64,000 bases of DNA from positions 124,001 to 188,000 of IMG/VR virus record IMGVR_UViG_3300011113_000640; one strand, written 5' to 3'. The notes beneath the pieces were generated by a model, which was given only the letters and a program-made list of their open reading frames with translations, was not told the DNA's origin and made no database searches. Position 1 is the stretch's first letter; the number at the start of each line of letters is the position of its first letter. This document shows positions 15,171 through 64,000 of this stretch, in pieces. A program made the translations under genes and the position numbers.

Positions 15171-15202
15171 GCGGATATTTATATGCCGTTTATGGCCCGA
15201 AT

Positions 15203-48074: not shown

Positions 48075-48659
48075 ATGTTTTATGTATATACCTATTTAAG
48101 AGAAGACGGCTCCCCGTATTATGTTGGCAAGGGTAGTGGAGATCGTGCCTACAAAAAATGGAATAAAAAAGACATTAAACCACCAAAAGATCAAACTCGT
48201 ATTATTATAGTAGAAGATAATTTAGATGAACAATCTGCATTTGATTTAGAAATTAAATTGATTGCCCAATATGGACGCAAAGATTTAGGCACAGGCATAC
48301 TACACAACAAAACAAACGGAGGTGAAGGATCGTCTGGGCATAAAATAGGTGGATGGCAATGGAGTGCAGAATCTAGAGAAAAACGCAAAGGTGCCGGCAA
48401 TCCAGCGTTTGGAAAAGAACAGAGTGTAGAAATTATACAGAAAAAAGTAGAAAGCTGGCTTAAGACCACTGGAGGTAAGCAAAATCCAGAATGGATAGAA
48501 AAACGTGCTAATGCTAGAAGGGGTAAAAAACAACCAGAGGGCACCGGAGAGAAAATTGCTGCAAAATTAAGAGGTAGAAAACAATCACCAGAGGCAGTAG
48601 CTAAACGAGCGGAGTCGTGTAGGTTATCGTGGGCTGGTAAAAAAGCACTAAATATTTGA
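48075..48659 (+). mobile_element. Free-standing GIY-YIG homing endonuclease with NUMOD3-like repeats
   Basis: FYVY...YYVGKG..R, E..LI..YGR and NKTNGGEG; basic C-terminal repeats (NPAFGK, RGKKQ, RGRKQS); A-rich composition. Confidence 0.85.
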
Positions 48660-50005: not shown

Positions 50006-51420
50006 TGGCACAATTTTTTTATGACCAACAAATACGCAGATTCCTGTTGCAGTTTGCCAGAATCTTCAGTAACTTTGATGTGGAATACGGTACCAACCAA
50101 TTTGGTCAAGGTCCAGATTCAGAACAAGACACCTTGGTGCGTGTGCCAGTTCGTTACGGTGATGCCAGCCGCCAGGCCCAGACCATCCTGCAGAACAACT
50201 CGGCCAACGACATGCCATCAACTCCCTTGATGACATTTTATATCACAGAATTCAAATATGATCGGCCTCGTATACAAGAACCTTATTTTGTAAACAACAT
50301 CTCAGTGCGTCAACGGACCTGGGATTCTGATACGCAGAGCTATGAAACCACACAGGGCAATGCATTTACCATAGAACGCCAGATGCCAGTGCCGTTTGAG
50401 ATGCGTGTAAACCTTGACATATGGACCAGCAACACCAATCAAAAATGGCAGTTGCTTGAACAGATCCTGACCTTGTTCAATCCCAGCCTGGAAATACAAA
50501 GCACTGACAATTACCTGGATTGGACCAGTCTGAGTGTGCTATACCTTGAAGACATACGATACAGCAGCCGGGTCATTCCGGTCAACGCAGACAATCCCAT
50601 AGACATAGCCACCTTGACTTTCCGCTTGCCCATGTGGATCACTCCTCCGGCCAAGGTCAAAAAATTGGGTGTTATTGAACGTGTTATTGCCAGCGTGTAT
50701 GATGCACAAGGCGACTTGGTCAATGCCTTGAACAACAGTGATCTTTTGTTGGGCACTAGACAGCGATTCACACCTTATGGTTATCAGGTCCTGTTGATAG
50801 ACAACAAACTACAGGCCCTGCGTCAACCACAGATCGTAGACGAACCCAATGCCAGCTTGACACCGCCAGATAGTCCCGACAGTAACCTGCTATGGGCCAG
50901 CGTGGTTGGCATGTATGGCACTCTAAGGCCGGGTATCAGTTATATCAGTCTTGAACAACCCGATGGCAGCCAGGTCACAGGCACCGTGGTTTTTGATCCT
51001 ACTGATGACAGATTCCTGTTGTTTGACATTGATGCTGGTACAGTTCCAGCCAATACTCTGGATCCTGTCAACGCTGTGATTGACCCTTTGATCAGCGGGC
51101 CTGGATCTGGTTTGCCAGCACCAGCAGTGGGTCAGAGATATTTGCTCACACAAGACACTGGTAGCTATTCTAATCCCAATCAGACCAATCCAGATGCCTG
51201 GTCTGGAACCAGTGGACAACCTTTGGTGGCACGCCGCAATGATATCATAATCTACGATGGCACACGTTGGCAAATTTATTTTGACAGTGGAAGCAGTCCT
51301 GATAATATACAGTATGTCACAAATATCACCACAGAGATACAATATCGTTGGACTGGCTCAGCCTGGGTCAAGAGCTATCAAGGACTTTACCCAGGAGGCA
51401 TGTGGAGTCTAACACTGTAA
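50005..51420 (+). CDS. Tail sheath stabilizer/terminator (gp15-like)
   Basis: FFYDQQIRRF, VPVRYG, MPVPF and QLLEQILTLFNP motifs. Confidence 0.8.
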   Translation: MAQFFYDQQIRRFLLQFARIFSNFDVEYGTNQFGQGPDSEQDTLVRVPVRYGDASRQAQTILQNNSANDMPSTPLMTFYITEFKYDRPRIQEPYFVNNISVRQRTWDSDTQSYETTQGNAFTIERQMPVPFEMRVNLDIWTSNTNQKWQLLEQILTLFNPSLEIQSTDNYLDWTSLSVLYLEDIRYSSRVIPVNADNPIDIATLTFRLPMWITPPAKVKKLGVIERVIASVYDAQGDLVNALNNSDLLLGTRQRFTPYGYQVLLIDNKLQALRQPQIVDEPNASLTPPDSPDSNLLWASVVGMYGTLRPGISYISLEQPDGSQVTGTVVFDPTDDRFLLFDIDAGTVPANTLDPVNAVIDPLISGPGSGLPAPAVGQRYLLTQDTGSYSNPNQTNPDAWSGTSGQPLVARRNDIIIYDGTRWQIYFDSGSSPDNIQYVTNITTEIQYRWTGSAWVKSYQGLYPGGMWSLTL

Positions 51421-51851
51421 CCGCGGTAGGAGTTTGGTTTTATACAGCCACAACTCACAGGTATCTTTATCTCATGCGCAACGATCCCAAACACCCCGGA
51501 AGTTGGGGCCTGCCTGGCGGACGTGTAGAGTTGGGTGAAACCTTGATCGAGGCCATCACAAGAGAATGTGAAGAAGAATTAGGATCAATGCCCAAATATC
51601 AACGCATTGTTCCATTGGAAAAATTTACCACCGCCGACTCTGGATTCGAATATCACACCTTTTTTTGTATAGTTGCCGAGGAATTCCGGCCCCAACTCAA
51701 TCACGAACACTTGGGATATGCATGGTTGGATTCTGGTGTATGGCCCCGACCCATGCATCCGGGTCTATGGAGCACTGTGAATTTTGAAGCAGTTCAAAAC
51801 AAAATTGTCACTATCGAATCAAGATTTACTGCGACACATCACAGTAACTGA
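51402..51851 (+). CDS. Nudix hydrolase
   Basis: Nudix box GGRVELGETLIEAITRECEEELG; probable GTG start. Confidence 0.9.
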   Translation: MESNTVTAVGVWFYTATTHRYLYLMRNDPKHPGSWGLPGGRVELGETLIEAITRECEEELGSMPKYQRIVPLEKFTTADSGFEYHTFFCIVAEEFRPQLNHEHLGYAWLDSGVWPRPMHPGLWSTVNFEAVQNKIVTIESRFTATHHSN

Positions 51852-52491
51852 TCCAATCTTGATAGTTTGTGGTGCGCACATTGGCACAGTCTAACCAGGC
51901 CGCAGGCATGTTGGTGGGCTCTCCGACCAAATAAAAATCCACAGGATAAGTTGTGAAGATTTGAGATATGTCTGTGATCCAGGTATCTCGCCCGGGACTC
52001 AAATCTTGAGTGTAACCTAACAAAAATATTTCCTTGTGTCCATCAAAAGCAGCCAGATAGATTATGGTGGCCATATCCAGGATCCTGGGCTTGTTGGGTA
52101 TGAGATAGAAATCTCCAGGGTTGGCTATGCAGTTTCGTGCTGTAGTGTAGACCACGTTGTCTTGATTGTAGGTTGACTGTTTGATTTGTGATAAAGGACC
52201 GGAATCGGTTTCCACCACAAAATCTAAACGCATTTCCAGAGCTATGGATCCCACGCCATAGGTCTGTAATTTTTTACTGCTGAGCAAGCCGCCGCGATGC
52301 CGAGCCAGCCTGGTGTAATCAAACCTCCATCGGTCTTCGGCACTGCCTATACATGCAGCACGACCACTGATGTGTTGATTTTCTATGGAATTTGGAATCC
52401 ATTCACGTGTTTCGTGTTTGCGACCACCAGACCAGCGTGTTTCTAGTATGACAAACTCGCCCGGATATTCCGATCTATATCGGGCAGTCAT
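51826..52491 (-). CDS. Divergent GT42/Maf(DUF115)-like protein
   Basis: YLAAFDGHKEIFLLGY and overall layout shared with 61414..61995. Confidence 0.45.
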   Translation of the reverse strand: MTARYRSEYPGEFVILETRWSGGRKHETREWIPNSIENQHISGRAACIGSAEDRWRFDYTRLARHRGGLLSSKKLQTYGVGSIALEMRLDFVVETDSGPLSQIKQSTYNQDNVVYTTARNCIANPGDFYLIPNKPRILDMATIIYLAAFDGHKEIFLLGYTQDLSPGRDTWITDISQIFTTYPVDFYLVGEPTNMPAAWLDCANVRTTNYQDWISYCDVSQ

Positions 52492-53597
52492 CAGGTCCTA
52501 CCTATAGCAATCTCTATGCGTCCTATGCCGGCACTGCTGTGATCTTCTAGAGACTTGCCAATGATGCAGGCTGGTTCGTACTTCTTGGGATCAAGGCGTG
52601 TGGCCACACCTGGAATGGCGCTGGCAACCAATCGGTCACCTTTGGCTATGGTGCCTGTGACCATGCAAGGCACTCGACCAGTCAAGGCCACGGCTAACAC
52701 ATTGTCTCCGGTCTGTGTGGCATTCATCAAATAGCTGGGGTTAGTAGATATCACTCCAGCCACACGTGTGCTGTGGTCTGTGCTGGCAATGGTGATTTCA
52801 GCCGGACCACCAAACTCTACCACTGTGCCTGGAGAGTAGTTATCGTCGGCCACATACATCTCTGCCAAGTCAGCGTATTGCGCACTGGTGGCTTTGGCAA
52901 ACACTGTGTTAAAATATCCCGTGGAACTTCCAATGTTGCCTACTGCGTTGGCCTGACCATTGCGAATATCAGTGTTGACCACAATCACACCACTGCCATT
53001 GGGTGCCAAGGTGATATTGCCATTGCTTGAAGTGCTGATAGTCATTGGTCCTGTGTCAACAATGTTACCAACTAAACTCAAGTCACCACCAGCAGTGACA
53101 GTTCCTGTGGCACTGATAACCCCAGTTACAAACTGTCCTGTGGTGGCCACAACAACCACGTTGCTGGTACCGCCGATACTAATGTTGGCATTGCCACTGG
53201 GTGTTTGAATATCAATGCTGGTTGTACCATTCTGTACACGATCACCTAAAATGTTACCGCTCAGTGTGGCATTGCCCGAGACGCTCAAATCGCCCGTAAT
53301 TGCTACCAATCCTGAGCTAATTGTCTGCACCGTGCTGCCAGCAATATTACTACGTATGTTTCCGCCCGAGGCAATCACTGCCACGCTTGATGTTCCAAAG
53401 CTGATGCTGTTGGAACTCAAGGCTGATATTTGACTGGTCACATAGGCCACAGTGGCAATGTTGCTGCCACCGGGTGTAATAGCATCATGCACCCGCAGGG
53501 TACCGTTGGTGGTGTCCACTGTGATTTCTGCCAAGGCTCCAGTAAAAGCCGCATTTTGTGCGTTGGTTCCGCGTCTGTATTGTACTTGTGAGGCCAT
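52491..53597 (-). CDS. Tail fibre protein (Mtd-N-like N-terminus, C-terminal ADLAE chaperone-like domain)
   Basis: QYRRGT...EITVDT...LRVHD; C-terminal SAQYADLAE...VALTGRVP...IIGKSL. Confidence 0.75.
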   Translation of the reverse strand: MASQVQYRRGTNAQNAAFTGALAEITVDTTNGTLRVHDAITPGGSNIATVAYVTSQISALSSNSISFGTSSVAVIASGGNIRSNIAGSTVQTISSGLVAITGDLSVSGNATLSGNILGDRVQNGTTSIDIQTPSGNANISIGGTSNVVVVATTGQFVTGVISATGTVTAGGDLSLVGNIVDTGPMTISTSSNGNITLAPNGSGVIVVNTDIRNGQANAVGNIGSSTGYFNTVFAKATSAQYADLAEMYVADDNYSPGTVVEFGGPAEITIASTDHSTRVAGVISTNPSYLMNATQTGDNVLAVALTGRVPCMVTGTIAKGDRLVASAIPGVATRLDPKKYEPACIIGKSLEDHSSAGIGRIEIAIGRT

Positions 53598-53617
53598 TTT
53601 AAGTTCCTATATGCTAT

Positions 53618-55615
53618 TTATGTTACTATGGCACGGTCTGTTACTCTGCGCCAATTTGTGCCATCAGCAAAGGCCGGCACTGGGCCGCCGGTTTCGTTGG
53701 TCACGTATATCATGGCCCCAGCTATCGCGGCACTGGGCAACGTATTGGCGGTATAACTGGGCAAAACAAGCTGATCTGGGTAGATCAAGCCCGATGTAAC
53801 CAGCGTGCCAAGATCTGCTTCACTGTCCACAGGGGCGGTTATCAGGCCAAGATCTTCCGATACCGTAACTGGTTCGGTCACTGCGCCAAAATCTGCTCCA
53901 TCTACAAAGAGTTCGCTACCGCCCTGGGTACCAATGGTTATGGTGTCTGTGGCGGGATCAATCACAATGCTGATACCAGTGCCAGCTGTCAAGGTCAGGG
54001 TATCAGCTATGCTGTCTGCCACAGCACTGTTGCCTCCGGTGACTGTGACGTTGCTGAACACATTGATACCAGATAGGCCAGCACCGTTGCCCAGGATATT
54101 ACCACCACTAATGTTGCCAGTTGCTGAAATCAGTCCACCAGTCAGAACATTACCGCCAGTGACATTACCAGTGGCGCTCAACAATCCTGTAACAAATTCA
54201 CCAGTGGTGGAAAATACAACAACGTTACTGACTCCACCAATTGAAATGTTGGCATTGCCGCCCGATGTGCCAATGTTGGCTTCGCTGGTGCCATTAAATA
54301 TTCTGCTGGCACTGAATCCAGTGGCAAAATAGATGTTGGCCAACAAATAATTGCCAGCAATGTTGCCCGTGGCACTGACGTTGCCTGCTGTGGTTAGATT
54401 GGCACCTGCGACGTCGCCAGTAACACTGGCACTTGAACCTGTGATTACACCGCCCACTGTTGATGCAGCAGTTTGAGTGCCAGTGACGCTGGTAGAACTA
54501 CCAGTTATTACTCCACCTATTGTAGAGGCAGATGTAGATGTGCCAGTTACACTGACACTGCTTCCAGTAATCACACCGCCCACTGTGCTGGCTGTTGCTA
54601 CAGTTCCTGTGACACTAATATTGGTGCCTGTGTAATTAGTAGATGAAATATTGCCGCTAGTAATGTTGCCAGTGACGCTGAGCAATCCAGTTATAAATTG
54701 ACCGGTAGTGGCAAACACTGCCACATTCGACGTGCCACCAACGGATACATTGACATTGCCGCCACTGGCTCCAATATTGGCTTCACTGGTGCCATTGAAT
54801 ATCCTTGATGAAAATATTCCCGATGCACAGGCCACGTTGCCTAAAAAGTAATTGGCCGTGACATTGCCGGTAGCCGACACAAGACCAGAAGTCAGGATAT
54901 TACCACCTGTGATATTACCACTGGTACTAAAAGCAGCTCCAGTATTGCCGGTCAATACGTTAGCTCCATTGACTGTGAGTACGGAACCAGTGGTGGCTAT
55001 CGACACATCCCCAATATACAATGTGCTGTTAGACAGCCATAAATCTTTCCATCTTAGGGCAGTATTTCCTAAACTATAAGTGACGTTGGCCGAAGGGAAC
55101 AGGTTACCAGTAAACGTCACTGCTGTGTTACCAACGCTGACAACGTTGGCTGTGCCAGCTGAACTTATTGTGACATTGGCATTTGAATTGACCACCACAT
55201 TTGACGTGCCGCCCGATATGGAGTTGGCCATGTAGTTTTGCGTAAACGTCAGGGCCGTGGTGTTGATCGTAATGGGATCATCAGTGATCAGTTTCCATTG
55301 CGTGTCGGCGTAGATGGCGCCTTCTGTGACCATGACAATCATGCCGGCTTCAATTTCACCGTTTTCGTTGCCGTCGCTGGTCCTGTCCCAGGTACCATTG
55401 GCACCCGATCCCAAGGTGGTCACAAGGTAAAGTCCGTTTTGGCTACCTGTGGTTTGTCCAGTGACCAAGATCCTGTCACCCTTGACTAGATTTACACTGT
55501 CAACCACACTGGGCGCACCACCACTCAAATTGATATTGGTAGCAGTAACTACTCGCGTGGACTGTTTGTAGTCTAAGTTGAATATCTGCGCGGCACGCGG
55601 TTTGGTTAAGCCCAT
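53618..55615 (-). CDS. Tail fibre protein
   Basis: GDRILV...NGLY domain, G/N/T/S repeats and C-terminal FADGTNWRR. Confidence 0.75.
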   Translation of the reverse strand: MGLTKPRAAQIFNLDYKQSTRVVTATNINLSGGAPSVVDSVNLVKGDRILVTGQTTGSQNGLYLVTTLGSGANGTWDRTSDGNENGEIEAGMIVMVTEGAIYADTQWKLITDDPITINTTALTFTQNYMANSISGGTSNVVVNSNANVTISSAGTANVVSVGNTAVTFTGNLFPSANVTYSLGNTALRWKDLWLSNSTLYIGDVSIATTGSVLTVNGANVLTGNTGAAFSTSGNITGGNILTSGLVSATGNVTANYFLGNVACASGIFSSRIFNGTSEANIGASGGNVNVSVGGTSNVAVFATTGQFITGLLSVTGNITSGNISSTNYTGTNISVTGTVATASTVGGVITGSSVSVTGTSTSASTIGGVITGSSTSVTGTQTAASTVGGVITGSSASVTGDVAGANLTTAGNVSATGNIAGNYLLANIYFATGFSASRIFNGTSEANIGTSGGNANISIGGVSNVVVFSTTGEFVTGLLSATGNVTGGNVLTGGLISATGNISGGNILGNGAGLSGINVFSNVTVTGGNSAVADSIADTLTLTAGTGISIVIDPATDTITIGTQGGSELFVDGADFGAVTEPVTVSEDLGLITAPVDSEADLGTLVTSGLIYPDQLVLPSYTANTLPSAAIAGAMIYVTNETGGPVPAFADGTNWRRVTDRAIVT

Positions 55616-55645
55616 GGTTGTTCCATTAATATCCAATATTTAGCC

Positions 55646-55678
55646 AAAAAAATAGGACTGTGACCAGTCCTATTTTTT
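55646..55678. terminator. Intrinsic terminator (potentially bidirectional)
   Basis: AAAAAATAGGACTG-TGAC-CAGTCCTATTTTTT. Confidence 0.85.
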
Positions 55679-55693
55679 CACAACTTTGAGCTA

Positions 55694-58600
55694 TTAAACG
55701 CGGCCGACCACAACTTCAATCACTGCATCGCCTTCGCTGTCGGCTAGAGCTTTGCCGATCACTGTGCCTACCTGTGGGTTGGCTTCGGCTCTTGCGGTTC
55801 CGTTGCCGGCACTGACCATCATGTCGCCTTTGCGTACTGTACCAGTTACGCTTGTGGGCACACGTCCGGTGAGTGCTACCATGGCTGTGTGTTCGCTCTG
55901 TAAACCGTCGTTCATCCTGTAGCTGGGATTGGTTGAAATCACACCTGCCACACGCGAACAACCATCATTTACACACAAGGTAACCTCTGCTGAACCGCCA
56001 AACATGACCACTGTACCCGGCGCATAGTCTGCGTCAGCGGCATATTTCTCAGCCAAGTCAGCGTATTGCGCACTAGTAGCTTTGGCAAATATGGTGTTGA
56101 AGTAGCCAGTTGAGTTACCAATATTGCCTACCGCATTGCCCATGTTGTTTATGATACCAGCCGAGGTAAATGTGACTATGCCGCTGCCGGCAACATTGAC
56201 AGCAATATTGCCTCCAGACGACAACACTTTTACATTGCTGGTGCCTGACTGTATACTGGTAGCATCAATACCTGTGAGCTGGCTACCATTACCAATAAAG
56301 AAGCTGCCGGTGATGTTGCCAGTAGCACTTACAATGCCGCCTGTCAATACATTACCGCCGGTGATGTTGCCAGCAACACTTGATGATGTGGTTGCACCAG
56401 CTAAAACAGTTTGTCCACCTGCTGGATTAGTCATCACGATCGCTGTGGCATTGGCACTGATTTGAGCATTGCCCAGATAGATTGTGCTGTTGGCCAAATA
56501 CAAATCTTTCCAGCGTCTTGTGGCTGTACCTAAATCGTATGTGACGTTGGCTGCTGGTAAGATATTGCCCGAAAATACGCTGTTAAACTGACTGATATTC
56601 AGTACATCGTTGGCTGCGTTTACGTCAAAGTGAATGTTACCGTTGGCCTCGGGGATCTCTATGCGTGACGTACCATTTTGAATTAGGTCAGTTGCAACGT
56701 TACCAAGGATGGTAGCATTGCCTGTCACTTCCAAATCACCTACGATATTTACTGTTGCACTGCTATCGCTAACAGACACCGAAGCGTTGCCTGAACTATT
56801 GGAAATAGTGGTAACAGTTGTAGTGGTTGTCAAGTTTCTGACATCAATCAAGTCGCCCGGAGCCGGAGCTTCAGTGAATAAGAGTGTGACTCCAGAAACA
56901 CTGTAGGCCGTGATTGGTATCTGTTGCACACCGTTGATGCTGACGATTGTGCCAGCTGTGGTGGCATTGGCTGTGAGTGTGAATGACACGGTACTGCCGT
57001 CACCGTTGAACTGCTGATCAGTAATAACTGTAAACGCTGGAACACCTACACTGGTCCATTGAGTGTTGTCATAGACCTCAAGACTGTCAGTGGTGGTGTT
57101 GAAACGGAACATGCCAGTGACCCCTGTTGCAGGACGTTGTGCTGTGTTGCCCACTGGCGTCTTGAACGACGTAGTTGTGTCAAAGTTCACTATGGCATTG
57201 GTGACCTGTGTGCTTGAACCAAAGCTGGCTGTGCCTGTGCCGGCATCCACATAGAACACGTTGGCCAAGGTGTCGCCATCCACTGCAAAGTCGGTGTCAA
57301 TGTCTGAACCATTGATGGTGATCCTGCCTGCAGCTGGTCCATCTATAGTACCGCTGGTAAGTGCAAGGTTAGCACCTGTGATGTTGCCGCTTACACTGGC
57401 GCTTGATCCAGTGATCACTCCGCCCACTGTTGATGCAGCTGTTACTGTGCCACTGACACTGGCACTTGTGCCTGTGATCACACCACCCACGGTGCTGGCA
57501 GCTGTTACTGTGCCGCTTGCGCTGACCGAGGTGCCAAACACATTGCCATTGAAATTGGCGGCATTCACGTTGGCTCCAACTGTGACTGTGTTTGATGTTT
57601 TGTTAAATGTGAATCCACTTGTTGCATTGGCTGTGCCATTATCGTTGAATATGACCTGTGTATCGGCACCGGGCGAGCTAAGGTTACCTGAAATGTTACC
57701 AAAGAAGTTGGCTGCAAACACGTTGCCTGTGGCCGACACATTGGCACTGGTCAAGATATTGCCAGTAGAGCTGACTGTGCCACCTGTGCCTAGATTGCCC
57801 ACTGTGGCAGTTCCGGTGGCACTTACTGTGCCACTAGTGGCAATGTTGCCACCTGTTACAGTACCAATTGCGCTGACCACACCGCCAGTGACCAAGTTGC
57901 CCACTGTAGCTGTACCAGCTGCACTTACAGTTCCGCCTGTGGCCAAGTTGCCACCAGTGACTGTGCCAGTTGCACTTGCAGTACCACCAGTGGCCAAATT
58001 ACCACCTGTGACAGTGCCCGAAACGTTGGCTGTTCCACCTGTTTCTAAATTGCCACCAGTTATAGTACCAGTTGCACTGATAGTGCCGCCAGTGAAAAGA
58101 TTACCCACTGTGGCTGCGCCCGTGGCAGAAATCGCTCCTGTTGTGCGTATATTGGCACCCGTGATGTTGCCACCTGCACTAACTGTGCCACCAGTGGCCA
58201 AGTTGCCCACTGTGGCTGTGCCAGTGGCACTAGTTACCCCAGTTACATATACGCCTGCGGTTGCAAATACGGCCACGTTGGGAGTGCCGCCAACACCAAT
58301 CAATACGTTGCCATCGGTCACGGGTATGTCTACATTACTGGTTCCATTGACCAATTTCTGTGCAGACGTGGCATTGGCCACACCAGCCAAGAAGAAGCCA
58401 TTACCAAAATAGTAGCCAGCTGTGGTTATGTTGCCTGTAGCGCTGACGATACCGCCAGTGAGTATGTTTCCACCAGTGACATTGCCTGTACCAGAAATAG
58501 TTCCACCAGTGGCCAAGTTACCTGCTGTGGCTGTGCCAGTTGCACTTACAGTTCCACCAGTGGCTACGTTACCACCAGTGATGGTTCCTGTGCCGGAAAT

Positions 58601-61264
58601 TGTTCCGCCTGTGGCAAGATTTCCACCAGTGATAGTACCAGTTGTACTTAAACTTGTGCCTGTGGCAGCACCAATGTTGGGTGTGGTCAAGTTTGCACCG
58701 GCTTTGACCGAGATATTGCCAAACCCATCAAAGGCTGTGGTGTTGTTGTCAACCCTGGCACTGATCACTGTGCCGTTGATGTCAATACCGTTGCCTTCTG
58801 TGTAGACCTGTGTCTGGCTGAATTGAGCAAATGTGATCTGACTGGTGCCAAATGTGATGGTGCCCGAAGGTGAGTCAACGATGTATGCTGATCCTGCATT
58901 GACATTACCGCTGGTGACAAAGAAGTAATCGTTTATGCTCAGTGTGTTTGCACTGGCTGGTCCATAGGTGTCAGTGTCCGAGCTACGTGTGATTGCCGTG
59001 GCATTGGAATAGACATAGATACCGTTGAATACTGCGTTGCCTTCGTCTTTGACCAGGATTCTTGTGCCCACGGTCTGCACGTTGGCTGTGTCAATGGTGG
59101 TAAAGGTTCCGGTGGTCTGGATGTAAGCACCCACACCGTTTGATACACCGTTGGGTTGAGTATAGGTAATAGTACCGCCTGTGGCTGTGGCCAAGGTGGT
59201 GTTGGTGGCCGCAACCACTGCTTGGTGATAGCTGATGGCCGTGGTAACCAATTGATCCACATAGAATTTGGAAGTGGCTGCTGTGTTGCCTGCCGGCTGG
59301 AGAGCCAGGCCCAAGATTTGTTTGTTATTCAAGACCACATTGGCAGCAGATTCAATGTTGATGTTGCCCGAAGCATTTACTATGCTCAAGCCTGAACTGC
59401 TGTATAATTGTGCGGTGTTGACATTGGCACCAGTGATGTTGCCTGTGGCTGATACCAGACCTCCAGTGAGTATGTTGCCACCAGTGACGTTGCCTGACAC
59501 ACTGGCTGTTCCGCCAGTGGCCAAGTTGCCACCAGTGATTGTGCCTGTTGCTGAAACTGTTCCGCCTGTGGCAAGGTTGCCAGTTGTGGCGGTACCACTG
59601 ACACTTAAATCAGTCAATGTGCCCACAGAAGTAAGGCTTGAGAATAAAACATTGGGACTTAGTGTATTACCCAATAAAGCGTTAGCGTTAACAGCACTGG
59701 CAGTAACGCCTGTCAAGAATGCACCGTTGCCAAGAAAGAAATTGTTGGTAGAAATATTGCCTGTGGCTGAAACTGTGCCACCTGTGTCCAAATTACCGCC
59801 CGTTACAGTGCCACTGGCACTGACTGTTCCACCAGTGTTTACGTTGCCCACTGTGGCTGTGCCTGTGGCAGATAGCAATCCTGCTGTGCGTATGTTACCG
59901 CTGGTGACGTTGCCCGTGGCACTGATATTGCCAGCGGTGCCAATAAAGCCACCTGTGATTGTGCCAGTTGCTGAAATTATCCCATTAGTGACAAGGTTGC
60001 CTACTGTGGCATTTTGTGCAATGTTGGCAGTTATTCCAGATAATGCTGCACCTGTGATGTCACCTGTGGCACTGACAAGACCACCAGTGAGCAGGTTGCC
60101 GCCTGTGACATTGCCTGTGGCAGTCAGTGGACCGGTGGCAAAATTTGCGGGTGTGACACCGTCATCACGAGTGACTGTGAACACATTAGGACCGGCTTCT
60201 TGGATCTGTAGATTGCCCAAATGAACTGGGCCTGCCAAATAAAGTTGATTCCACCGACTGGTGGTTGTGCCCAAATTATAGGTCACGTTGGCTGTGGGTA
60301 TGACATTGCCACTTGCTGAAACGTTGGCACCAGTGATATCGCCGGTGGCGCTGACAGTGCCACCTGTGGCCAAGTTTCCACCAGTTACTGTGCCGGTTGA
60401 GCTTACAGTGCCAGTGACTGTGACAGCATTGGTAGTTTTGTTAAATCTAAATCCAGCAGTGGAATTGGCCAGACCATTGTCATTGAACAGCACATCTGTA
60501 TTGCCACCACCTATGACAAGATTACCAGAAACGTTTCCAAAAAAGTTTGCAGCCGTGACATTACCTGTGGCGCTGACATTTCCTGCTGTGTTGATGTTGC
60601 CACCAGTGATGGTTCCTGTGGCACTGACTGTTCCACCAGTGGCTACATTGCCCACAGTGGCTGTGCCAGTTGCACTAACAGTTCCGCCAGTGGCCAAGTT
60701 GCCACCCGTGACTGTACCAGTAGAGCTAATCAAGCCCACTGTGGTTATGTTAGCGCCAGTGATGTTGCCGGTGACATTGAGAGCACTGATAATATTGCCG
60801 CTCAAGCTGGTAGTGCCAGCTACTGTGAGATTGCCACCTACAACAGTGTTGGCTGAATGTAGATTGGCATAGCTGGTAATGGTAATAACTGTGTTTGATT
60901 CTGCGGTGCTGGTAAAGGCCGTGATAAATTCACCAGCGCTTTCGTCCCACACAAAGGCTATGTTTTCGCTGGATCCGCGTTGGCCAATGTAGCCGATGTC
61001 AACTGTGGGGCTACCGGTCTGTCCAGATCCCAACAGTAAAATTGGGTCTTCAATGGTGGTGATGGTGGTGTCAATGGCTGTGGTGTTGCCTTGTACCGTG
61101 AGGTTGCCAGTAATGGTCAGGTTTGATCCATAGGTAAGATTGTTGGCGATCTTGGTGGCTGTGATCGAGTAGTTTTGCAGTTTGGTACCTGCATTGATAC
61201 CCACATATAGGTTGCCTGATTGTGCATCAGTGACTTGATTGTTATTAATTCTTGTGACGGCCAT
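55694..61264 (-). CDS. Long tail fibre protein (1856 aa)
   Basis: Many ~17-aa TGNVTGGNL.TGG.VSA repeats; C-terminal ADLAE domain. Confidence 0.85.
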   Translation of the reverse strand: MAVTRINNNQVTDAQSGNLYVGINAGTKLQNYSITATKIANNLTYGSNLTITGNLTVQGNTTAIDTTITTIEDPILLLGSGQTGSPTVDIGYIGQRGSSENIAFVWDESAGEFITAFTSTAESNTVITITSYANLHSANTVVGGNLTVAGTTSLSGNIISALNVTGNITGANITTVGLISSTGTVTGGNLATGGTVSATGTATVGNVATGGTVSATGTITGGNINTAGNVSATGNVTAANFFGNVSGNLVIGGGNTDVLFNDNGLANSTAGFRFNKTTNAVTVTGTVSSTGTVTGGNLATGGTVSATGDITGANVSASGNVIPTANVTYNLGTTTSRWNQLYLAGPVHLGNLQIQEAGPNVFTVTRDDGVTPANFATGPLTATGNVTGGNLLTGGLVSATGDITGAALSGITANIAQNATVGNLVTNGIISATGTITGGFIGTAGNISATGNVTSGNIRTAGLLSATGTATVGNVNTGGTVSASGTVTGGNLDTGGTVSATGNISTNNFFLGNGAFLTGVTASAVNANALLGNTLSPNVLFSSLTSVGTLTDLSVSGTATTGNLATGGTVSATGTITGGNLATGGTASVSGNVTGGNILTGGLVSATGNITGANVNTAQLYSSSGLSIVNASGNINIESAANVVLNNKQILGLALQPAGNTAATSKFYVDQLVTTAISYHQAVVAATNTTLATATGGTITYTQPNGVSNGVGAYIQTTGTFTTIDTANVQTVGTRILVKDEGNAVFNGIYVYSNATAITRSSDTDTYGPASANTLSINDYFFVTSGNVNAGSAYIVDSPSGTITFGTSQITFAQFSQTQVYTEGNGIDINGTVISARVDNNTTAFDGFGNISVKAGANLTTPNIGAATGTSLSTTGTITGGNLATGGTISGTGTITGGNVATGGTVSATGTATAGNLATGGTISGTGNVTGGNILTGGIVSATGNITTAGYYFGNGFFLAGVANATSAQKLVNGTSNVDIPVTDGNVLIGVGGTPNVAVFATAGVYVTGVTSATGTATVGNLATGGTVSAGGNITGANIRTTGAISATGAATVGNLFTGGTISATGTITGGNLETGGTANVSGTVTGGNLATGGTASATGTVTGGNLATGGTVSAAGTATVGNLVTGGVVSAIGTVTGGNIATSGTVSATGTATVGNLGTGGTVSSTGNILTSANVSATGNVFAANFFGNISGNLSSPGADTQVIFNDNGTANATSGFTFNKTSNTVTVGANVNAANFNGNVFGTSVSASGTVTAASTVGGVITGTSASVSGTVTAASTVGGVITGSSASVSGNITGANLALTSGTIDGPAAGRITINGSDIDTDFAVDGDTLANVFYVDAGTGTASFGSSTQVTNAIVNFDTTTSFKTPVGNTAQRPATGVTGMFRFNTTTDSLEVYDNTQWTSVGVPAFTVITDQQFNGDGSTVSFTLTANATTAGTIVSINGVQQIPITAYSVSGVTLLFTEAPAPGDLIDVRNLTTTTTVTTISNSSGNASVSVSDSSATVNIVGDLEVTGNATILGNVATDLIQNGTSRIEIPEANGNIHFDVNAANDVLNISQFNSVFSGNILPAANVTYDLGTATRRWKDLYLANSTIYLGNAQISANATAIVMTNPAGGQTVLAGATTSSSVAGNITGGNVLTGGIVSATGNITGSFFIGNGSQLTGIDATSIQSGTSNVKVLSSGGNIAVNVAGSGIVTFTSAGIINNMGNAVGNIGNSTGYFNTIFAKATSAQYADLAEKYAADADYAPGTVVMFGGSAEVTLCVNDGCSRVAGVISTNPSYRMNDGLQSEHTAMVALTGRVPTSVTGTVRKGDMMVSAGNGTARAEANPQVGTVIGKALADSEGDAVIEVVVGRV
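57700..60800 (-). repeat. Degenerate 51-bp (17-aa) coding tandem repeats in several blocks
   Basis: Recurrent gtggccaagttgccaccagtga-type units; boundaries are approximate. Confidence 0.8.
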
Positions 61265-61413
61265 TTTTGGTCTCCAGTTCGCCTTTTAACACCCCTAGCA
61301 AGCGGTTTTCTTGCTATAATAATTCTTCTAGCCATGCGAATTCGCAGGCTATGACTTATTTACCAGAGCCCAATAAAAAGGCAAATTGTGTGGTGATTTT
61401 TGAGAGTGTTAGC

Positions 61414-61995
61414 TCAGGGTTGAATACCCAAAATGCTGACAAAATCTGTGAGATTTTCGTGTTGCAAGTTTGAGATTTTGTCTAGCTCGGCAATTCTGGC
61501 CGTGGTATCTCCGTAGACTCTTACAAATTGTGTGTGCGGATAATCTGCGCAGATTTCTGTGATTTGCCGTATCCAGTTGCCGGCAAAGGTGGGCGGATGT
61601 GCAGATGTTTTGTAAAATTCTGTGTCTGCATACACATTGTTGAACTGGTTGTTTTCTCGAGGGCCCATGTCAAAACCCAGCAGATATACCATAGTGTGCC
61701 CATGGTCAGCGGCCAAGGCCACGGCGTTGGGCCCTGAGCTGTAGCCATGATATTTACGAAGCACGGCTTGAGCTTCCAGGCCCGGCAAGGGTCGTCGGGT
61801 GTGGAACTGATTGTGTTTGGCATAGCCAGATTCCTGAATGGCTGTGGCTATGGGCTGGTCTGTGGCCACCAGGACATCGGGCGTAAACTCTCTGTACAAG
61901 GCGTTGCACCCATAGATTTTTCCAAATTGTTTTAGCCATACAAGATCTACGTTGCGACGGCTGACTCCGTTTCCTAACACAAAAGCAGTGCTCAT
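61414..61995 (-). CDS. GT42/Maf(DUF115)-like putative glycosyltransferase
   Basis: AFVLGNGVS...YGCNALY...SSG...A...GH..VYLLGFD parallels the CstII-type sialyltransferase layout. Confidence 0.55.
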   Translation of the reverse strand: MSTAFVLGNGVSRRNVDLVWLKQFGKIYGCNALYREFTPDVLVATDQPIATAIQESGYAKHNQFHTRRPLPGLEAQAVLRKYHGYSSGPNAVALAADHGHTMVYLLGFDMGPRENNQFNNVYADTEFYKTSAHPPTFAGNWIRQITEICADYPHTQFVRVYGDTTARIAELDKISNLQHENLTDFVSILGIQP

Positions 61996-62047
61996 AAAAA
62001 ATCCCCACTGTACTTATTGTGGGGATTTTGGGTTGGCTACAAAAAAA

Positions 62048-62839
62048 TTAAGTCTTGTAGTTTTCTACGATAGCAAGATCCAGGTTGCCTGTGCTGAGCT
62101 GGCTGGTGCCTGCCCATGTGTCAACTTCGGCGCCCGACTTGGCTGTAACGCCTTCGTCGCTGAAGAAGTTGGCTGCAAACTCAACATCGTTGACCACTTG
62201 TGCATAATTCCAAACATCGCCGGTGTTGGCATTGCCACCTGTGGCACCGCCAGCAAAGTTCTGCAAGAACTTGTTGGTCAGTTTGCTGATTGGTGTTTCA
62301 GAAGAATCGTTGCTGAAGTAGCTGATGCTCATGTTACCAGCTGTGGGGCTTAAATCGCTGGTAAGAACACAGATACCTACTGCGTTTACACGACCAGAAC
62401 CTGTGGAGCCCAAGGCAGCTGTGGCTGTGAAGATGGTTCCAAGTGCTGCGTTTGGAGCACCATAGCTGGCCCAGTCTGTGTTGCCTACCACTGTGATACG
62501 ATAGGCTTGATTGGCTACCAAGGCTGTTCGGCTTGTGATATCTGCCACCAAGAATTTGTGTGAACCTTTTTGACGTATGATCTGTCCATCGGCTTCAGCG
62601 AATCCTGTCACAAACACACGACACTTGACAATAGGATAGTTGGTGCTGGCCACGGTAGGAGGCTGAGCTCCGCCAACCACGCCTAGATATTCCGTGGCCG
62701 AATCCCATACAGGACTAGGGTACACAGGTGCTGTCAAACTAGTTAGTGCATTGAAACCAATGTCTACACCTGGATTTGCACCGGTAGTAGAATTATAACC
62801 AGTTTCGATAATTTTTTTAATTTTGAGAGGACGTCCCAT
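62048..62839 (-). CDS. Putative virion structural protein
   Basis: Start MGRPLKIKK at 62839 with SD AAGGAG; late promoter at 62932-62937. Confidence 0.65.
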   Translation of the reverse strand: MGRPLKIKKIIETGYNSTTGANPGVDIGFNALTSLTAPVYPSPVWDSATEYLGVVGGAQPPTVASTNYPIVKCRVFVTGFAEADGQIIRQKGSHKFLVADITSRTALVANQAYRITVVGNTDWASYGAPNAALGTIFTATAALGSTGSGRVNAVGICVLTSDLSPTAGNMSISYFSNDSSETPISKLTNKFLQNFAGGATGGNANTGDVWNYAQVVNDVEFAANFFSDEGVTAKSGAEVDTWAGTSQLSTGNLDLAIVENYKT

Positions 62840-62849
62840 TTTTGTTTTC

Positions 62850-62925
62850 TCCTTAAAGAAGCCCAATGCGAGTTCTAGTCGCTACGCGGTGGGGTTAATC
62901 ACCGCATAAAACGCAGGATTGCGTT
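62850..62925 (-). promoter_or_regulatory. Structured 5' leader (three hairpins), candidate cis-regulatory RNA
   Basis: AACGCA/TGCGTT, TATGCGGTG/CACCGCGTA and GCGA/TCGC stems between TAAATA and the SD. Confidence 0.55.
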
Positions 62926-62984
62926 GACAAGTATTTATGGCAAGGCAAATATTTTAGGTCAGTACATACAAATTAAATAGAACC

Positions 62985-64000
62985 ATGCATACAGAAGAAC
63001 TCATAGCGTTAGGCAATCAAGCCCGAGAAGACAACAATCCAGAATTGGCCTTGCAGTACTATGTGCAGGCCTTGACTCAAGATCGCAATTCGGCAAGTGC
63101 ATTCAACAACTATGGCAATGTTTTGAGAGAGTGCGGTGATCCTGCGGGTGCCATACCTTTCTTGCAACGAAGCATAACTTTGGCTCCAGAGCATCCCACT
63201 GCGCAATTCAATTTGGCTGTGGCCTACTTGCTCATGGGCGACTACGAGCGCGGTTGGCCACAGTACGAAACACGCTGGAACTACGAACACCTGGCTGGCA
63301 CGTTGCCCAATTACACACAACCGCGTTGGACTGGACAAGATGTCCGAGACAAAACTGTGTTGATCATGGGCGAGCAAGGTCACGGTGACAACATACAGTT
63401 TGTGAGATTTGTTGAGGATATTAAAACCCGCGGCGCCCGAGTTATCTTGGCAGTCAGCGCCAGCCTCAAACCCTTGTTGCAGGGAGAGGCCATACCCGAC
63501 ATTGTTTGCCCGGGCGACGCCTTGCCAGAGTTTGATTATTGGATTCCCATAATGAGCATACCTGCTGTAGTGGGTAGCACCTTGGAAAATCTTGCTCCTG
63601 TGCAGTATTATCTCACAGCCGACACAGCATTACAACGTACCTGGCAACAACGCCTGGGACCAAAAACTCGCTTGCGTGTGGGCTTCTGTTGGTCGGGCCG
63701 CAGAGACACCTGGATCAATCGTCACAAAGGCATGCCTTTTGCAACCATGTTAGAACTGATAAAAAGAAATCCCACGTATGAATGGGTCAATCTGCAGTGC
63801 GATTGTACCCCTGAAGAAGAAGAAGCCCTGGTAGCTGCAGGAGTCACAGCTTATCCAGGTAGCATACAGAGCTTTGCAGATTCAGCGGCCTTGCTCATGC
63901 ACATGGATGTAGTCTTGAGTGTGGACACCGCTGTGGCGCACCTGGCCGGTGCATTGGGCAGACCTGTGTGGGTCATGCTGAGTCAATATGCTTTGGATTG
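62985..64000 (+). CDS. TPR-domain + GT-B (GT9-like) glycosyltransferase (partial, runs off the window end)
   Basis: Not in the ORF track. Manual translation gives MHTEELIALGNQ...AFNNYGNVLRE (TPR), EQGHGDNIQFVRF and VDTAVAHLAGALGRPVW; TAAATA 5 nt upstream. Confidence 0.85.
   Translation, partial: MHTEELIALGNQAREDNNPELALQYYVQALTQDRNSASAFNNYGNVLRECGDPAGAIPFLQRSITLAPEHPTAQFNLAVAYLLMGDYERGWPQYETRWNYEHLAGTLPNYTQPRWTGQDVRDKTVLIMGEQGHGDNIQFVRFVEDIKTRGARVILAVSASLKPLLQGEAIPDIVCPGDALPEFDYWIPIMSIPAVVGSTLENLAPVQYYLTADTALQRTWQQRLGPKTRLRVGFCWSGRRDTWINRHKGMPFATMLELIKRNPTYEWVNLQCDCTPEEEEALVAAGVTAYPGSIQSFADSAALLMHMDVVLSVDTAVAHLAGALGRPVWVMLSQYALD

What the first reader, a model, noticed from the sequence alone, without database searches (positions are those of the whole stretch)
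51826..64000. Tail-fibre cassette bracketed by candidate protein glycosyltransferases
Seen: three fibre genes extremely rich in Thr/Ser and N-x-T/S (GNVT, GNIT, ANVT) are flanked on both sides by paralogous GT42/Maf-like genes (51826, 61414), with a late-promoter TPR+GT-B gene at 62985. Known: Maf proteins and TPR-GT-B enzymes of the FlmG type glycosylate flagellins with nonulosonic acids. Inference: a dedicated fibre or virion glycosylation system, possibly supplied by the 8.7-16 kb island.
Basis: inference. Interest (0 to 1): 0.65.

Follow-up and report, generated by a model that had tools for sequence, protein, structure and literature searches.

The report
Phage fibre genes flanked by glycosyltransferase-like genes
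In an uncultured 320-kb freshwater T4-like phage, a variable set of fibre genes sits between two small genes with a sialyltransferase/Maf-like fold and next to a relative of the bacterial flagellin glycosyltransferase FlmG, so the phage may put sugars on its own virion proteins, but nothing here shows that it does.

Summary
Three Thr/Ser/Gly/Asn-rich fibre genes (368, 672 and 1856 aa, minus strand) are bracketed by two small genes. These are distant paralogues (hhalign 97.9 %).

The 193-aa gene folds confidently (pLDDT 87.8). Its best structural matches are the Maf flagellin glycosyltransferase (Z 12.4) and the GT42 sialyltransferases Cst-I/CstII. It keeps the GNG.S, CN..Y, SG and G.D motifs.

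The 221-aa paralogue has lost most of those motifs. Its start overlaps the stop of the last fibre gene by one base in 5 of 5 loci.

The gene at 62985 (381 aa, ending outside the window) is TPR plus a GT9-like GT-B domain. It matches FlmG-like proteins in a Caulobacteraceae FlbT-FlaF-flagellin locus (E 4e-29).

The gene order is conserved in relatives while the fibre genes between are swapped.

Not supported:
- The N-x-S/T sequons are mostly a matter of composition, and Maf and FlmG are O-glycosyltransferases.
- The genome has no NeuB or CMP-sugar synthetase.
- The 8.7-16 kb island holds GT2, GT8 and an HldE-like nucleotidyltransferase instead.
- There is no canonical late promoter.

Virion O-glycosylation is the best reading (about 0.45) but is untested. 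I rate it a new variant of a known kind.

The parts
51826..52491 (-). 221-aa divergent paralogue of the Maf/GT42-like gene (P0001). Its ATG overlaps the stop of the last fibre gene by 1 nt. It lacks the GNG, CN..Y, SSG and G.D motifs, so it may be a pseudo-enzyme or a fibre-specific factor.
   Evidence: The same 1-nt overlap occurs in L006, L007, L030 and L031. No Pfam, PHROG or NCBIfam hit.
52491..53597 (-). 368-aa fibre protein with an Mtd_N-type N-terminus. Its C-terminal ~150-aa domain is shared with the 1856-aa fibre.
   Evidence: Pfam PF18454 E 4e-10; phrog_9648 tail protein; phrog_6427/22593.
53618..55636 (-). 672-aa fibre protein, S+T 25.9 %. Its N-terminal domain matches PHROG families named tail fibre protein and head decoration. 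The TTG start is uncertain.
   Evidence: The N-terminal 284 aa are 73 % identical to the N-terminus of a 2827-aa fibre in L006.
55694..61264 (-). 1856-aa fibre protein made of imperfect Gly/Thr/Ser/Asn-rich repeats, S+T 25.9 %. Its C-terminal domain is like that of the 368-aa fibre.
61414..61995 (-). 193-aa single-domain Maf/GT42-like protein (P0002), a candidate CMP-sugar-dependent glycosyltransferase.
   Evidence: AF2 pLDDT 87.8. Foldseek: Cst-I, CstII, PmST, Maf. VIA: Maf Z 12.4, Cst-I Z 9.7. Motif alignment to PmST. phrog_4603 'alpha-2,3-sialyltransferase' E 5e-7. 3422 homologues at E <= 0.001, none of the 120 listed with a Pfam domain or functional name.
62048..62839 (-). 263-aa conserved protein of unknown function (p263), listed as a 272-aa TTG ORF ending at 62866. 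The true start is probably ATG 62839, behind an AAGGAG ribosome-binding site. It always lies between the TPR-GT and the Maf-like gene. It may be a virion protein or an acceptor.
   Evidence: 79 % identical from residue 1 to the L004 homologue. No family or atlas hit.
62840..62984 (.). Divergent intergenic region between p263 and the TPR-GT gene. It holds a sigma-70-like TTGACA-18-AATATT site (62924-62953, + strand) and a TTAAATA 5 nt before the TPR-GT ATG.
62985..64000 (+). FlmG-type TPR + GT-B (GT9-like) glycosyltransferase gene. The full length is 381 aa, ending at window-equivalent 64130 (L001:985-2130).
   Evidence: Pfam TPR families; Glyco_transf_9 24.1 bits against cut-off 22. Foldseek top hits are SPY and OGT. 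BLASTP E 4e-29 to an FlmG-like protein in a flagellin locus.
51348..51851 (+). NUDIX hydrolase gene, the conserved boundary of the cassette on the gp15 side. It is convergent with the 221-aa gene and overlaps it.
   Evidence: 73-80 % identical to the NUDIX-annotated genes of L004 and L006.
11081..15242 (-). Part of the 8.7-16 kb island: GT2 (11081-11794), GT8 (13732-14445) and an HldE-domain-II-like nucleotidyltransferase fused to a PMI-type cupin (14415-15242). It is a possible source of a nucleotide sugar, but its link to the fibre cassette is unproven.

Best explanation
The region is the fibre module of an uncultured freshwater T4-like jumbo phage.

A hypervariable cassette of Ser/Thr-rich fibre genes lies in one minus-strand array: p263, Maf-like P0002, the fibres, then P0001. 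This array sits next to a divergently transcribed FlmG-type TPR-GT-B gene.

The most likely function is cytoplasmic O-glycosylation of virion proteins before assembly. The acceptors would be the fibres, p263, or both. In this model:
- The short TPR domain of the FlmG-like enzyme selects the acceptor, and its GT-B domain transfers the sugar.
- The 193-aa protein is a minimal Maf/GT42-type transferase that uses a CMP-activated acidic sugar.
- The 221-aa paralogue, translationally coupled to the last fibre gene, has lost the nucleotide-sugar motifs. It more likely acts as a fibre-specific adaptor or pseudo-enzyme.
- The donor would come from the host (CMP-Pse, CMP-Leg or CMP-Neu5Ac) or from a phage-made nucleotide sugar.

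Shown: the folds, the homologies, the motifs and the conserved gene order.
Inferred: catalysis, the donor, the acceptor and the timing.
For: - Fold. The P0002 model has pLDDT 87.8. All top Foldseek hits are GT42 sialyltransferases and Maf. The independent VIA search puts Maf first, Z 12.4 over 166 residues.
- Motifs. Residues invariant in the P0002 family, G8-N9-G10, S12, C30-N31, S87-G88 and G107/D109, with Y34 nearly invariant, align with the same motifs of the P. multocida CMP-Neu5Ac sialyltransferase.
- Paralogy. P0001 and P0002 are homologous.
- FlmG homology. The TPR-GT aligns over residues 8-377 with a 584-aa TPR-GT encoded between flagellin genes beside FlbT and FlaF. FlmG's TPR domain binds the acceptor and its GT-B domain sets the donor (PMC7591256; bioRxiv 10.1101/2022.03.25.485807).
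- Synteny. MCP | TPR-GT | p263 | P0002 occurs in 5 of 5 loci. Last fibre gene overlapping P0001 | NUDIX | gp15 occurs in 5 of 5 loci. The fibre genes between differ.
- Substrate composition. The fibres are among the most Ser/Thr-rich proteins of the genome.
- Precedent. Phage virion glycosylation is known in mycobacteriophages (Freeman et al. 2023, as cited in PMC12619734).
Against: - There is no direct evidence of glycans.
- The genome has no NeuB-type synthase and no CMP-sugar synthetase, so the canonical donors of Maf and FlmG would have to come from an unknown host.
- P0002 does not reach any Pfam model. It matches bacterial PF01973 Maf domains only at 53 % probability over 32 columns.
- P0001 lacks the motifs.
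- The TPR-GT model is poor, pLDDT 64. Its closest bacterial relatives (35-40 % identity) are paralogues of unknown function rather than the flagellin-locus copies (28-32 %).
- A relative of P0002 in Pelagibacter phage HTVC008M lies between uvsY and a helicase gene, not near fibres.
- One relative (L004) has the fibres without P0001.
- Other Ser/Thr-rich fibre-like ORFs elsewhere in the genome have no such neighbours.
Confidence: 0.45

Rival explanations
1. The enzymes act on the host, not on the virion. The FlmG-like and Maf-like proteins would modify host flagellin, pili, LPS/LOS or capsule during infection. This could block superinfection, stop progeny sticking to debris, or change host motility.
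For: - The characterised relatives act on bacterial substrates: flagellin for Maf and FlmG, LOS for GT42, and LPS core for GT9 (PMC7591256).
- The closest bacterial homologues of the TPR-GT are in Caulobacteraceae, which use FlmG.
- The TPR-GT is on the opposite strand from the fibre array and has a sigma-70-like promoter, which would suit earlier expression.
- The phage carries further GT2 and GT8 genes and sugar-nucleotide enzymes.
Against: - P0002 and P0001 are embedded in the fibre gene array. P0001 is translationally coupled to a fibre gene in 5 of 5 loci.
- The position beside the MCP and fibre genes is fixed while the fibres change.
- The single-domain Maf-like proteins lack the acceptor-binding domains of bacterial Mafs.
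Confidence: 0.22
2. One or both small Maf-like proteins are not enzymes. They would be fibre assembly factors or chaperones that re-use a Rossmann-like fold, as tail-fibre assembly genes usually lie directly downstream of fibre genes.
For: - P0001 occupies the classical chaperone position and overlaps the last fibre gene's stop.
- P0001 has lost the GNG, CN..Y, SSG and G.D motifs and matches no family.
- P0001 is missing where the cassette differs (L004).
Against: - P0002 keeps all the nucleotide-sugar motifs as invariant or nearly invariant residues across 47 aligned sequences.
- Both families have many invariant polar residues, as enzymes do.
- L004's last fibre has the same C-terminal domain yet no P0001.
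Confidence: 0.2
3. The TPR-GT is a protein O-heptosyltransferase-like enzyme, comparable to the autotransporter heptosyltransferases AAH and TibC. It would use an ADP- or CDP-activated sugar made with the phage's HldE-domain-II-like nucleotidyltransferase, and would decorate Ser/Thr in the repeated fibre units. Nonulosonic acids would play no part.
For: - The only GT family the protein reaches is GT9 (24.1 bits against cut-off 22).
- The island encodes an rfaE-domain-II-like nucleotidyltransferase fused to a PMI-type cupin (E 5e-21).
- The genome has no NeuB or CMP-sugar synthetase.
- The fibres are built of short imperfect repeats. I recall from memory that the heptosylated autotransporter passenger domains are also repeat-built; this was not checked here.
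Against: - The GT9 match covers only 32 residues. The heptosyltransferase equivalogs are far below cut-off, 19.6 against 185 bits.
- The nucleotidyltransferase is far below the HldE cut-off, 75 against 181.5 bits, and lies about 48 kb away.
- Full-length homology is to FlmG-type proteins.
- TibC and AAH did not appear among the fold matches, though the model was poor.
Confidence: 0.1
4. P0002 and P0001 are MptE/thiamine-pyrophosphokinase-like small-molecule kinases. Their place among the fibre genes would be accidental.
For: The same fold class includes archaeal MptE HPPK (Z 9.3) and thiamine pyrophosphokinases (Z 7-8). The genome encodes GTP cyclohydrolase I.
Against: - Maf and GT42 score higher and cover more residues.
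- The motifs match the sialyltransferase.
- The conserved position is in the structural module.
Confidence: 0.04

Closest known systems
Maf (motility accessory factor, MAF_flag10 / PF01973) flagellin glycosyltransferases, e.g. Magnetospirillum magneticum Maf (PDB 5mu5)
   Same: This is the best structural match of the 193-aa protein: Z 12.4, with 166 residues aligned to the central catalytic domain, residues 272-512. The core motif aligns weakly, SSGPNA..LLGFDMG against ITVSHQALG..ILAGFDLC. Both are cytoplasmic enzymes encoded beside genes for Ser/Thr-rich filament proteins.
   Different: - The phage proteins consist of the central domain only: 193 or 221 aa, against 632 residues in the solved Maf chain and open frames of about 730-900 aa in most of the sampled bacteria.
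- They do not reach the Pfam model.
- There is no flagellin and no Pse/Leg pathway in the genome.
CAZy GT42 sialyltransferases: Campylobacter Cst-I and CstII, Pasteurella multocida PmST (PDB 2p2v, 1ro7, 9c08)
   Same: These are the top Foldseek hits (E 2e-5 to 3e-4, TMq 0.47-0.57). The GNG.S, CN..Y, SG and G.D motifs align with PmST. The low-confidence loop at 110-140 lies where I recall CstII's flexible lid to be; that placement is from memory and was not tested.
   Different: Sequence identity is 13-17 %, with no significant sequence match (E 0.27). The phage protein is shorter. A catalytic histidine could not be assigned. GT42 acceptors are lipooligosaccharides, not proteins.
FlmG-type flagellin glycosyltransferases of Caulobacterales (TPR + GT-B; PMC7591256)
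   Same: The architecture is the same. There is full-length homology to FlmG-like proteins encoded in a FlbT-FlaF-flagellin locus: 28 % identity, E 4e-29, with shared GEQGxGD and C-terminal GT motifs.
   Different: - The TPR part is only about 100 aa, against the 313-residue N-terminal TPR part of FlmG (PMC7591256).
- The closest bacterial relatives are other TPR-GT9-like paralogues, 35-40 % identity.
- The gene is in a phage structural module.
- Donor and acceptor are unknown.
Virion glycosylation of mycobacteriophages (Freeman et al. 2023, Cell Host Microbe, cited in PMC12619734)
   Same: Phage-encoded glycosyltransferase genes lie close to structural genes, and the proposed outcome is glycans on virion proteins.
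   Different: Here the enzyme families are of the flagellin-glycosyltransferase type, the host is probably Gram-negative, the candidate acceptors are fibres, and there is no experimental evidence.
GT41 TPR-GT-B protein glycosyltransferases (OGT, SPINDLY, bacterial OGTs)
   Same: These are the top Foldseek hits of the whole TPR-GT model (E 8e-7 to 1e-5). They share the TPR-plus-GT-B logic of acceptor selection.
   Different: TM-scores are low (0.23-0.27) and come from a low-confidence model. There is no sequence match outside the TPRs.

Membership tests
CAZy GT42 / Pfam CST-I sialyltransferases | Significant sequence match to the family | tested here: not met
   No Pfam hit even at E <= 10. phmmer against PDB found nothing. 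The profile against PDB gave PmST 9c08 at only E 0.27.
CAZy GT42 / Pfam CST-I sialyltransferases | Fold of the catalytic domain | tested here: met
   Foldseek: Cst-I 2p2v E 2.1e-5, CstII 1ro7, PmST 9c08, TMq 0.47-0.57. VIA: Cst-I 2p56 Z 9.7 over 154 residues. This holds for P0002 only.
CAZy GT42 / Pfam CST-I sialyltransferases | N-terminal GNG.S and CN..Y motifs and central (S/T)SG...G.D motif | tested here: met
   P0002 family invariants G8 N9 G10 S12 C30 N31 S87 G88 G107 D109, with Y34 nearly invariant, align with the PmST motifs. P0001 lacks them.
CAZy GT42 / Pfam CST-I sialyltransferases | Catalytic base and use of CMP-sialic acid | not testable with these tools
   No residue-level structural alignment was available. 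His133 is not invariant in the family.
Maf flagellin glycosyltransferases (PF01973) | Match to PF01973 | tested here: not met
   An own-genome search at E <= 1 found nothing at either gene. hhalign against 14 bacterial Maf domains gave 53 % probability, E 1.4e-4 over 32 columns for P0002 and nothing for P0001.
Maf flagellin glycosyltransferases (PF01973) | Fold of the central domain | tested here: met
   5mu5_A is the top hit of 48,161 chains, Z 12.4, 166 residues, chain residues 272-512.
Maf flagellin glycosyltransferases (PF01973) | Three-domain architecture with an acceptor-binding domain | tested here: not met
   The phage proteins are 193 and 221 aa, single domain. The solved Maf chain has 632 residues, and most open frames in the sampled bacteria are about 730-900 aa.
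Maf flagellin glycosyltransferases (PF01973) | Linkage to flagellin and Pse/Leg biosynthesis genes | tested here: not met
   No NeuB or CTP_transf_3 in the 320-kb record. The neighbours are phage fibre and head genes.
FlmG-type flagellin glycosyltransferases | N-terminal TPR domain plus C-terminal GT-B domain | tested here: met
   Pfam TPR families match within residues 8-89, with the GT9-like C-terminal motif at 297-328. Foldseek top hits are TPR-GT-B enzymes. The GT part of the model has low confidence.
FlmG-type flagellin glycosyltransferases | Sequence homology to FlmG proteins of flagellin loci | tested here: met
   BLASTP 28 % identity, E 4e-29, residues 8-377 against 188-578 of L011:8356-10110, which lies between flagellin genes beside FlbT and FlaF.
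FlmG-type flagellin glycosyltransferases | Orthology: FlmG is the nearest bacterial relative | tested here: not met
   The best Caulobacteraceae hits (35-40 % identity, E to 1e-73) are other TPR-GT9-like paralogues. The one whose neighbours were examined (L009) lies beside a sulfotransferase gene, not flagellar genes.
FlmG-type flagellin glycosyltransferases | Flagellin acceptor and CMP-Pse/Leg donor | not testable with these tools
   Biochemistry is needed. The genome has no donor pathway.
GT9 heptosyltransferases / autotransporter heptosyltransferases | Match to the family models | tested here: inconclusive
   PF01075 scores 24.1 bits against cut-off 22, but over 32 residues only. NCBIfam heptosyltransferase I scores 19.6 against 185.3 bits.
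GT9 heptosyltransferases / autotransporter heptosyltransferases | ADP-heptose supply | tested here: inconclusive
   An rfaE-domain-II-like nucleotidyltransferase lies at 14415-15242, 75 bits against cut-off 181.5. No other pathway genes were identified.
Phage virion glycosylation systems (mycobacteriophage type) | Glycans on virion proteins that depend on phage glycosyltransferases | not testable with these tools
   The phage is uncultured and no proteomic data were available. No listed run holding the stretch is on record as RNA.

The most novel reading that the evidence does not exclude
A widespread freshwater lineage of T4-like jumbo phages has taken up cut-down versions of both known classes of bacterial flagellin glycosyltransferase: a single-domain Maf-like enzyme and a short-TPR FlmG-like enzyme. 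It would use them to O-glycosylate its own exchangeable fibres with host-made sialic-acid-like sugars. That would be the first nonulosonic-acid-decorated phage virion. The motif-less paralogue would act as a fibre-specific specificity factor.
Probability: 0.15. Interest if true: 0.8.

Novelty: new variant of a known kind. Interest (0 to 1): 0.6.

Why it matters
Glycosylation of phage virions is documented for very few phages, and with other enzyme families. If this system works as proposed, four things would follow.
- The two bacterial flagellin-glycosylation enzyme types would be shown to work on non-flagellar, phage-encoded filament proteins.
- There would be a natural minimal Maf-type catalytic domain of about 190 aa, useful for dissecting donor and acceptor specificity and for glyco-engineering.
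- Fibre glycans would become a further layer of host-range or stability control in abundant lake phages.
- The function of a family of thousands of uncharacterised small phage proteins would become testable (3422 and 1580 homologues at E <= 0.001; many BFVD look-alikes).

Tried and rejected
- Near-identical DNA search in the phage collection found nothing. P0001 has no tblastn match in cultured phages. P0002 matches only the N-terminal third of proteins of Pelagibacter myophages, where the gene lies between uvsY and a helicase gene.
- Sequence searches of P0001, P0002 and the GT domain of the TPR-GT against PDB gave only noise.
- The structure model of the TPR-GT was poor (pLDDT 64). The wide VIA search then returned almost only TPR proteins, so the GT-B fold rests on Pfam, on homology and on low-TM Foldseek hits.
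- hhalign of the P0002 family against bacterial PF01973 domains was marginal, and that of the P0001 family was negative.
- The protein atlas gave nothing for p263.
- A diversity-generating retroelement, suggested by the Mtd_N domain, is unlikely: no reverse transcriptase was found in the genome.
- I dropped the argument that the TPR-GT must have a conserved acceptor because it is highly conserved. Against the same relatives it is 63-80 % identical while the MCP is 96-99 %.
- N-glycosylation at N-x-S/T is rejected as the leading idea. The enzymes found are of O-glycosyltransferase types, and the sequon excess is mostly compositional.
- One Pfam call failed on a wrong coordinate. One genome search failed on a handle format.
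- Read laying and the large representative protein search were not used.

Full report
CONTEXT
The window is bases 124001-188000 of a single 320,541-bp IMG/VR virus record. CheckV puts it at 93 % complete, and G+C is 46 %.

It is a T4-like jumbo myophage. A gp15-type tail sheath stabiliser lies at 50005-51420. Just beyond the window lie the gp23 major capsid protein, the gp21 protease and the gp20 portal.

No cultured phage is close. The nearest gp15 relatives are 33-35 % identical: Sinorhizobium phage Phosso, Agrobacterium phage Atu_ph07 and Pseudomonas phage PA5oct.

Parts of the region recur in lake, river and other freshwater metagenomes from 13 studies. Homologues sit on metagenomic contigs of 290-513 kb.

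WHAT IS IN THE REGION
On the minus strand, read in the direction of transcription:
- p263 (62839-62048). It is listed as a 272-aa TTG ORF. Alignment with a homologue and an AAGGAG site point to ATG 62839.
- P0002, 193 aa (61995-61414).
- Fibre proteins of 1856, 672 and 368 aa.
- P0001, 221 aa (52491-51826). Its ATG overlaps the stop of the last fibre gene by one base.

Hairpins followed by T-runs lie just before P0002 and just before the 672-aa gene.

On the plus strand, divergent from p263, is a 381-aa TPR gene (62985 to window-equivalent 64130).

A NUDIX gene (51348-51851) and gp15 close the other side.

THE FIBRES
- They hit the Mtd_N Pfam domain and PHROG families named 'tail protein', 'tail fiber protein' and 'head decoration'. 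I therefore call them fibres without deciding between tail, neck or head.
- S+T is 23-26 % against a genome median of 11.8 %. Two of them rank 2nd and 3rd of 237 ORFs.
- N-x-S/T sequons are dense, 3.3-3.4 per 100 aa against a median of 0.56. Against shuffles of the same proteins the excess is small: z 2.4, 2.5 and 1.1. The motif mostly reflects Asn/Thr/Ser-rich structural repeats.
- The 368- and 1856-aa proteins share a C-terminal domain of about 150 aa.

THE TWO SMALL FLANKING GENES
Neither reaches any Pfam or NCBIfam model. P0002 weakly hits a PHROG named alpha-2,3-sialyltransferase (E 5e-7). Both belong to large families of unannotated metagenomic proteins: 3422 and 1580 proteins at E <= 0.001. 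The two families are homologous: 97.9 % probability, E 3e-13, 162 columns.

P0002:
- With a 47-sequence alignment it gave a confident model (pLDDT 87.8, pTM 0.87).
- Foldseek against the PDB returned, before anything unrelated, the GT42 sialyltransferases Cst-I, CstII and PmST and the Maf glycosyltransferase of Magnetospirillum (E 2e-5 to 4e-4).
- The Foldseek-independent search of 48,161 chains ranked Maf first (Z 12.4, 166 residues of its central domain). Next came Cst-I (Z 9.7), archaeal MptE pyrophosphokinase (Z 9.3) and thiamine pyrophosphokinases.
- A profile search of the PDB gave a non-significant (E 0.27) but informative alignment to the P. multocida CMP-Neu5Ac sialyltransferase. GNG.S, CN..Y, SG and G.D align, and most of these are invariant residues of the P0002 family, Y34 being nearly invariant.
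- Against 14 bacterial PF01973 (Maf) domains the profile match is marginal: 53 %, 32 columns.

So P0002 has the Maf/GT42 fold and nucleotide-sugar motifs, but it is not a sequence member of either family. It consists of the catalytic-type domain alone.

P0001:
- In the profile alignment it replaces GNG with GSA, CN with VG, SSG with unrelated residues and the Asp of G.D with Thr.
- It is homologous, but it probably does not bind a CMP-sugar in the canonical way.

Small proteins of the same fold, some named DUF115 or MptE-like, are common in uncultured phages and occur in a giant virus.

THE TPR GENE
- Pfam finds TPRs within residues 8-89 and a match to Glyco_transf_9 that just passes the cut-off (24.1 against 22 bits, 32 residues).
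- Most listed homologues carry the same pair of domains. The atlas calls the clusters 'tetratricopeptide repeat-containing glycosyltransferase family protein'.
- The structure model was poor (pLDDT 64). Its best Foldseek hits are the TPR-GT-B protein glycosyltransferases SPY and OGT, at low TM-score.
- The decisive test was homology to FlmG. Homologues are present in 28 of 31 sampled Caulobacteraceae genomes. In two genomes, copies lie within 1-2 kb of flagellin genes.
- In one locus the order is TPR-GT, FlbT, FlaF, flagellin, TPR-GT, flagellin. I recognise this as the Caulobacter flmG neighbourhood from memory.
- The phage protein aligns with that 584-aa protein over residues 8-377, at 28 % identity and E 4e-29.
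- Its nearest bacterial relatives, however, are other paralogues (35-40 % identity). The one whose neighbours I examined lies beside a sulfotransferase gene.

SYNTENY
- MCP | TPR-GT (opposite strand) | p263-like | P0002-like is found in the window and in four independent contigs.
- Last fibre gene overlapping P0001-like | NUDIX | gp15 is found in the window and four contigs.
- One contig shows the whole bracket with only two fibre genes (L031). One lacks P0001 (L004).
- Between the brackets the fibre genes differ in number, length and modules. Against the same relatives the MCP stays 96-99 % identical, the TPR-GT 63-80 %, P0002 64-68 % and P0001 65-73 %.

The association of these genes with an exchangeable fibre cassette is therefore conserved and not a chance neighbourhood.

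SUGAR SUPPLY
- The genome has no NeuB-type synthase and no CMP-sugar synthetase.
- Elsewhere, at 254-306 kb of the genome, there are DegT aminotransferases, four epimerase/dehydratases and methyltransferases.
- So the phage can make nucleotide sugars, but apparently not the CMP-nonulosonic acids used by Maf and FlmG (bioRxiv 10.1101/2022.03.25.485807). Those would have to come from the unknown host.

PROMOTER
- The window holds one TATAAATA, far away.
- Before the TPR gene are a sigma-70-like site and a TTAAATA 5 nt from the ATG.
- TAAATA occurs within 40 nt upstream of 46 ORFs against 2.9 expected. A relaxed late-type element is possible but unproven.

INTERPRETATION
The best reading is a virion protein O-glycosylation module. 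It would comprise a FlmG-like enzyme whose TPRs pick the acceptor, a minimal Maf/GT42-like transferase, and a degenerate paralogue coupled to the last fibre. I put this at about 0.45.

Rivals are host-directed glycosylation (0.22), a chaperone role for one or both small proteins (0.20, not exclusive for P0001), a heptosyltransferase-like chemistry (0.10, a variant of the main idea) and a small-molecule kinase (0.04).

The literature searches found no report of Maf- or FlmG-type genes in phage structural modules. Virion glycosylation itself is known from mycobacteriophages (cited in PMC12619734).

Noticed in passing
window 48054-48659 (+): A 201-aa ORF just upstream of the virion-protein and gp15 genes matches PHROG families that include a homing endonuclease (phrog_314, E 2e-14). 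It may be a mobile endonuclease inserted in the structural module.
   Followed up: no
whole genome; e.g. window 62973-62979, 53618-55650: The hexamer TAAATA lies within 40 nt upstream of 46 ORFs against 2.9 expected, often only 2-10 nt before the start codon (TPR-GT, portal, the 295-aa gene, the 672-aa fibre). It could be a relaxed T4-type late promoter giving nearly leaderless mRNAs, or a translation signal.
   Followed up: partly
window 52491-52950 and 55694-56150 (C-terminal ~150 aa of the 368- and 1856-aa fibres): The two fibres share a C-terminal domain (motif AQYADLAE...GTVV...RVAGVISTNPSY), also present in fibres of L004 and L006. By eye it recalls the C-terminal autoproteolytic or chaperone domains of phage appendage proteins, but no Pfam model matched.
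   Followed up: partly
window 14415-15242 (-): An unusual fusion: an HldE-domain-II / cytidylyltransferase-like nucleotidyltransferase (E 5e-21) joined to a mannose-6-phosphate-isomerase-type cupin. It lies next to GT8, GT2 and methyltransferase genes.
   Followed up: partly
genome 254-306 kb (L014, L015), outside the window: A second sugar-nucleotide region holds two full DegT aminotransferases plus a fragment, four epimerase/dehydratases, methyltransferases and a transketolase-like fragment. Nearby are GTP cyclohydrolase I and a radical SAM protein (a possible 7-deazaguanine pathway) and an 828-aa FG-GAP repeat protein.
   Followed up: partly
L001:2110-2997 (window-equivalent 64110-64997, - strand): A 295-aa gene without family hits lies between the MCP and the TPR-GT and overlaps the TPR-GT 3' end by about 20 nt. 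It is absent in L004 and replaced by a 112-aa gene in L032, so this is an indel hot spot beside the capsid gene.
   Followed up: no
window 61996-62047 and 55637-55693: Strong hairpins followed by T-runs lie directly before the starts of P0002 and of the 672-aa fibre gene. They are likely terminators or attenuators that set expression levels within the array.
   Followed up: no
L003 (Pelagibacter phage HTVC008M, 77489-78319): A 276-aa hypothetical protein shares the N-terminal GNG..CN..Y region of P0002 (53 % identity over 64 aa). It lies between uvsY and a helicase gene, so the fold family is not always fibre-linked.
   Followed up: partly
window 16658-17716 (-): A RecA/UvsX-like recombinase (E 1e-19) borders the glycosyltransferase island.
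   Followed up: no
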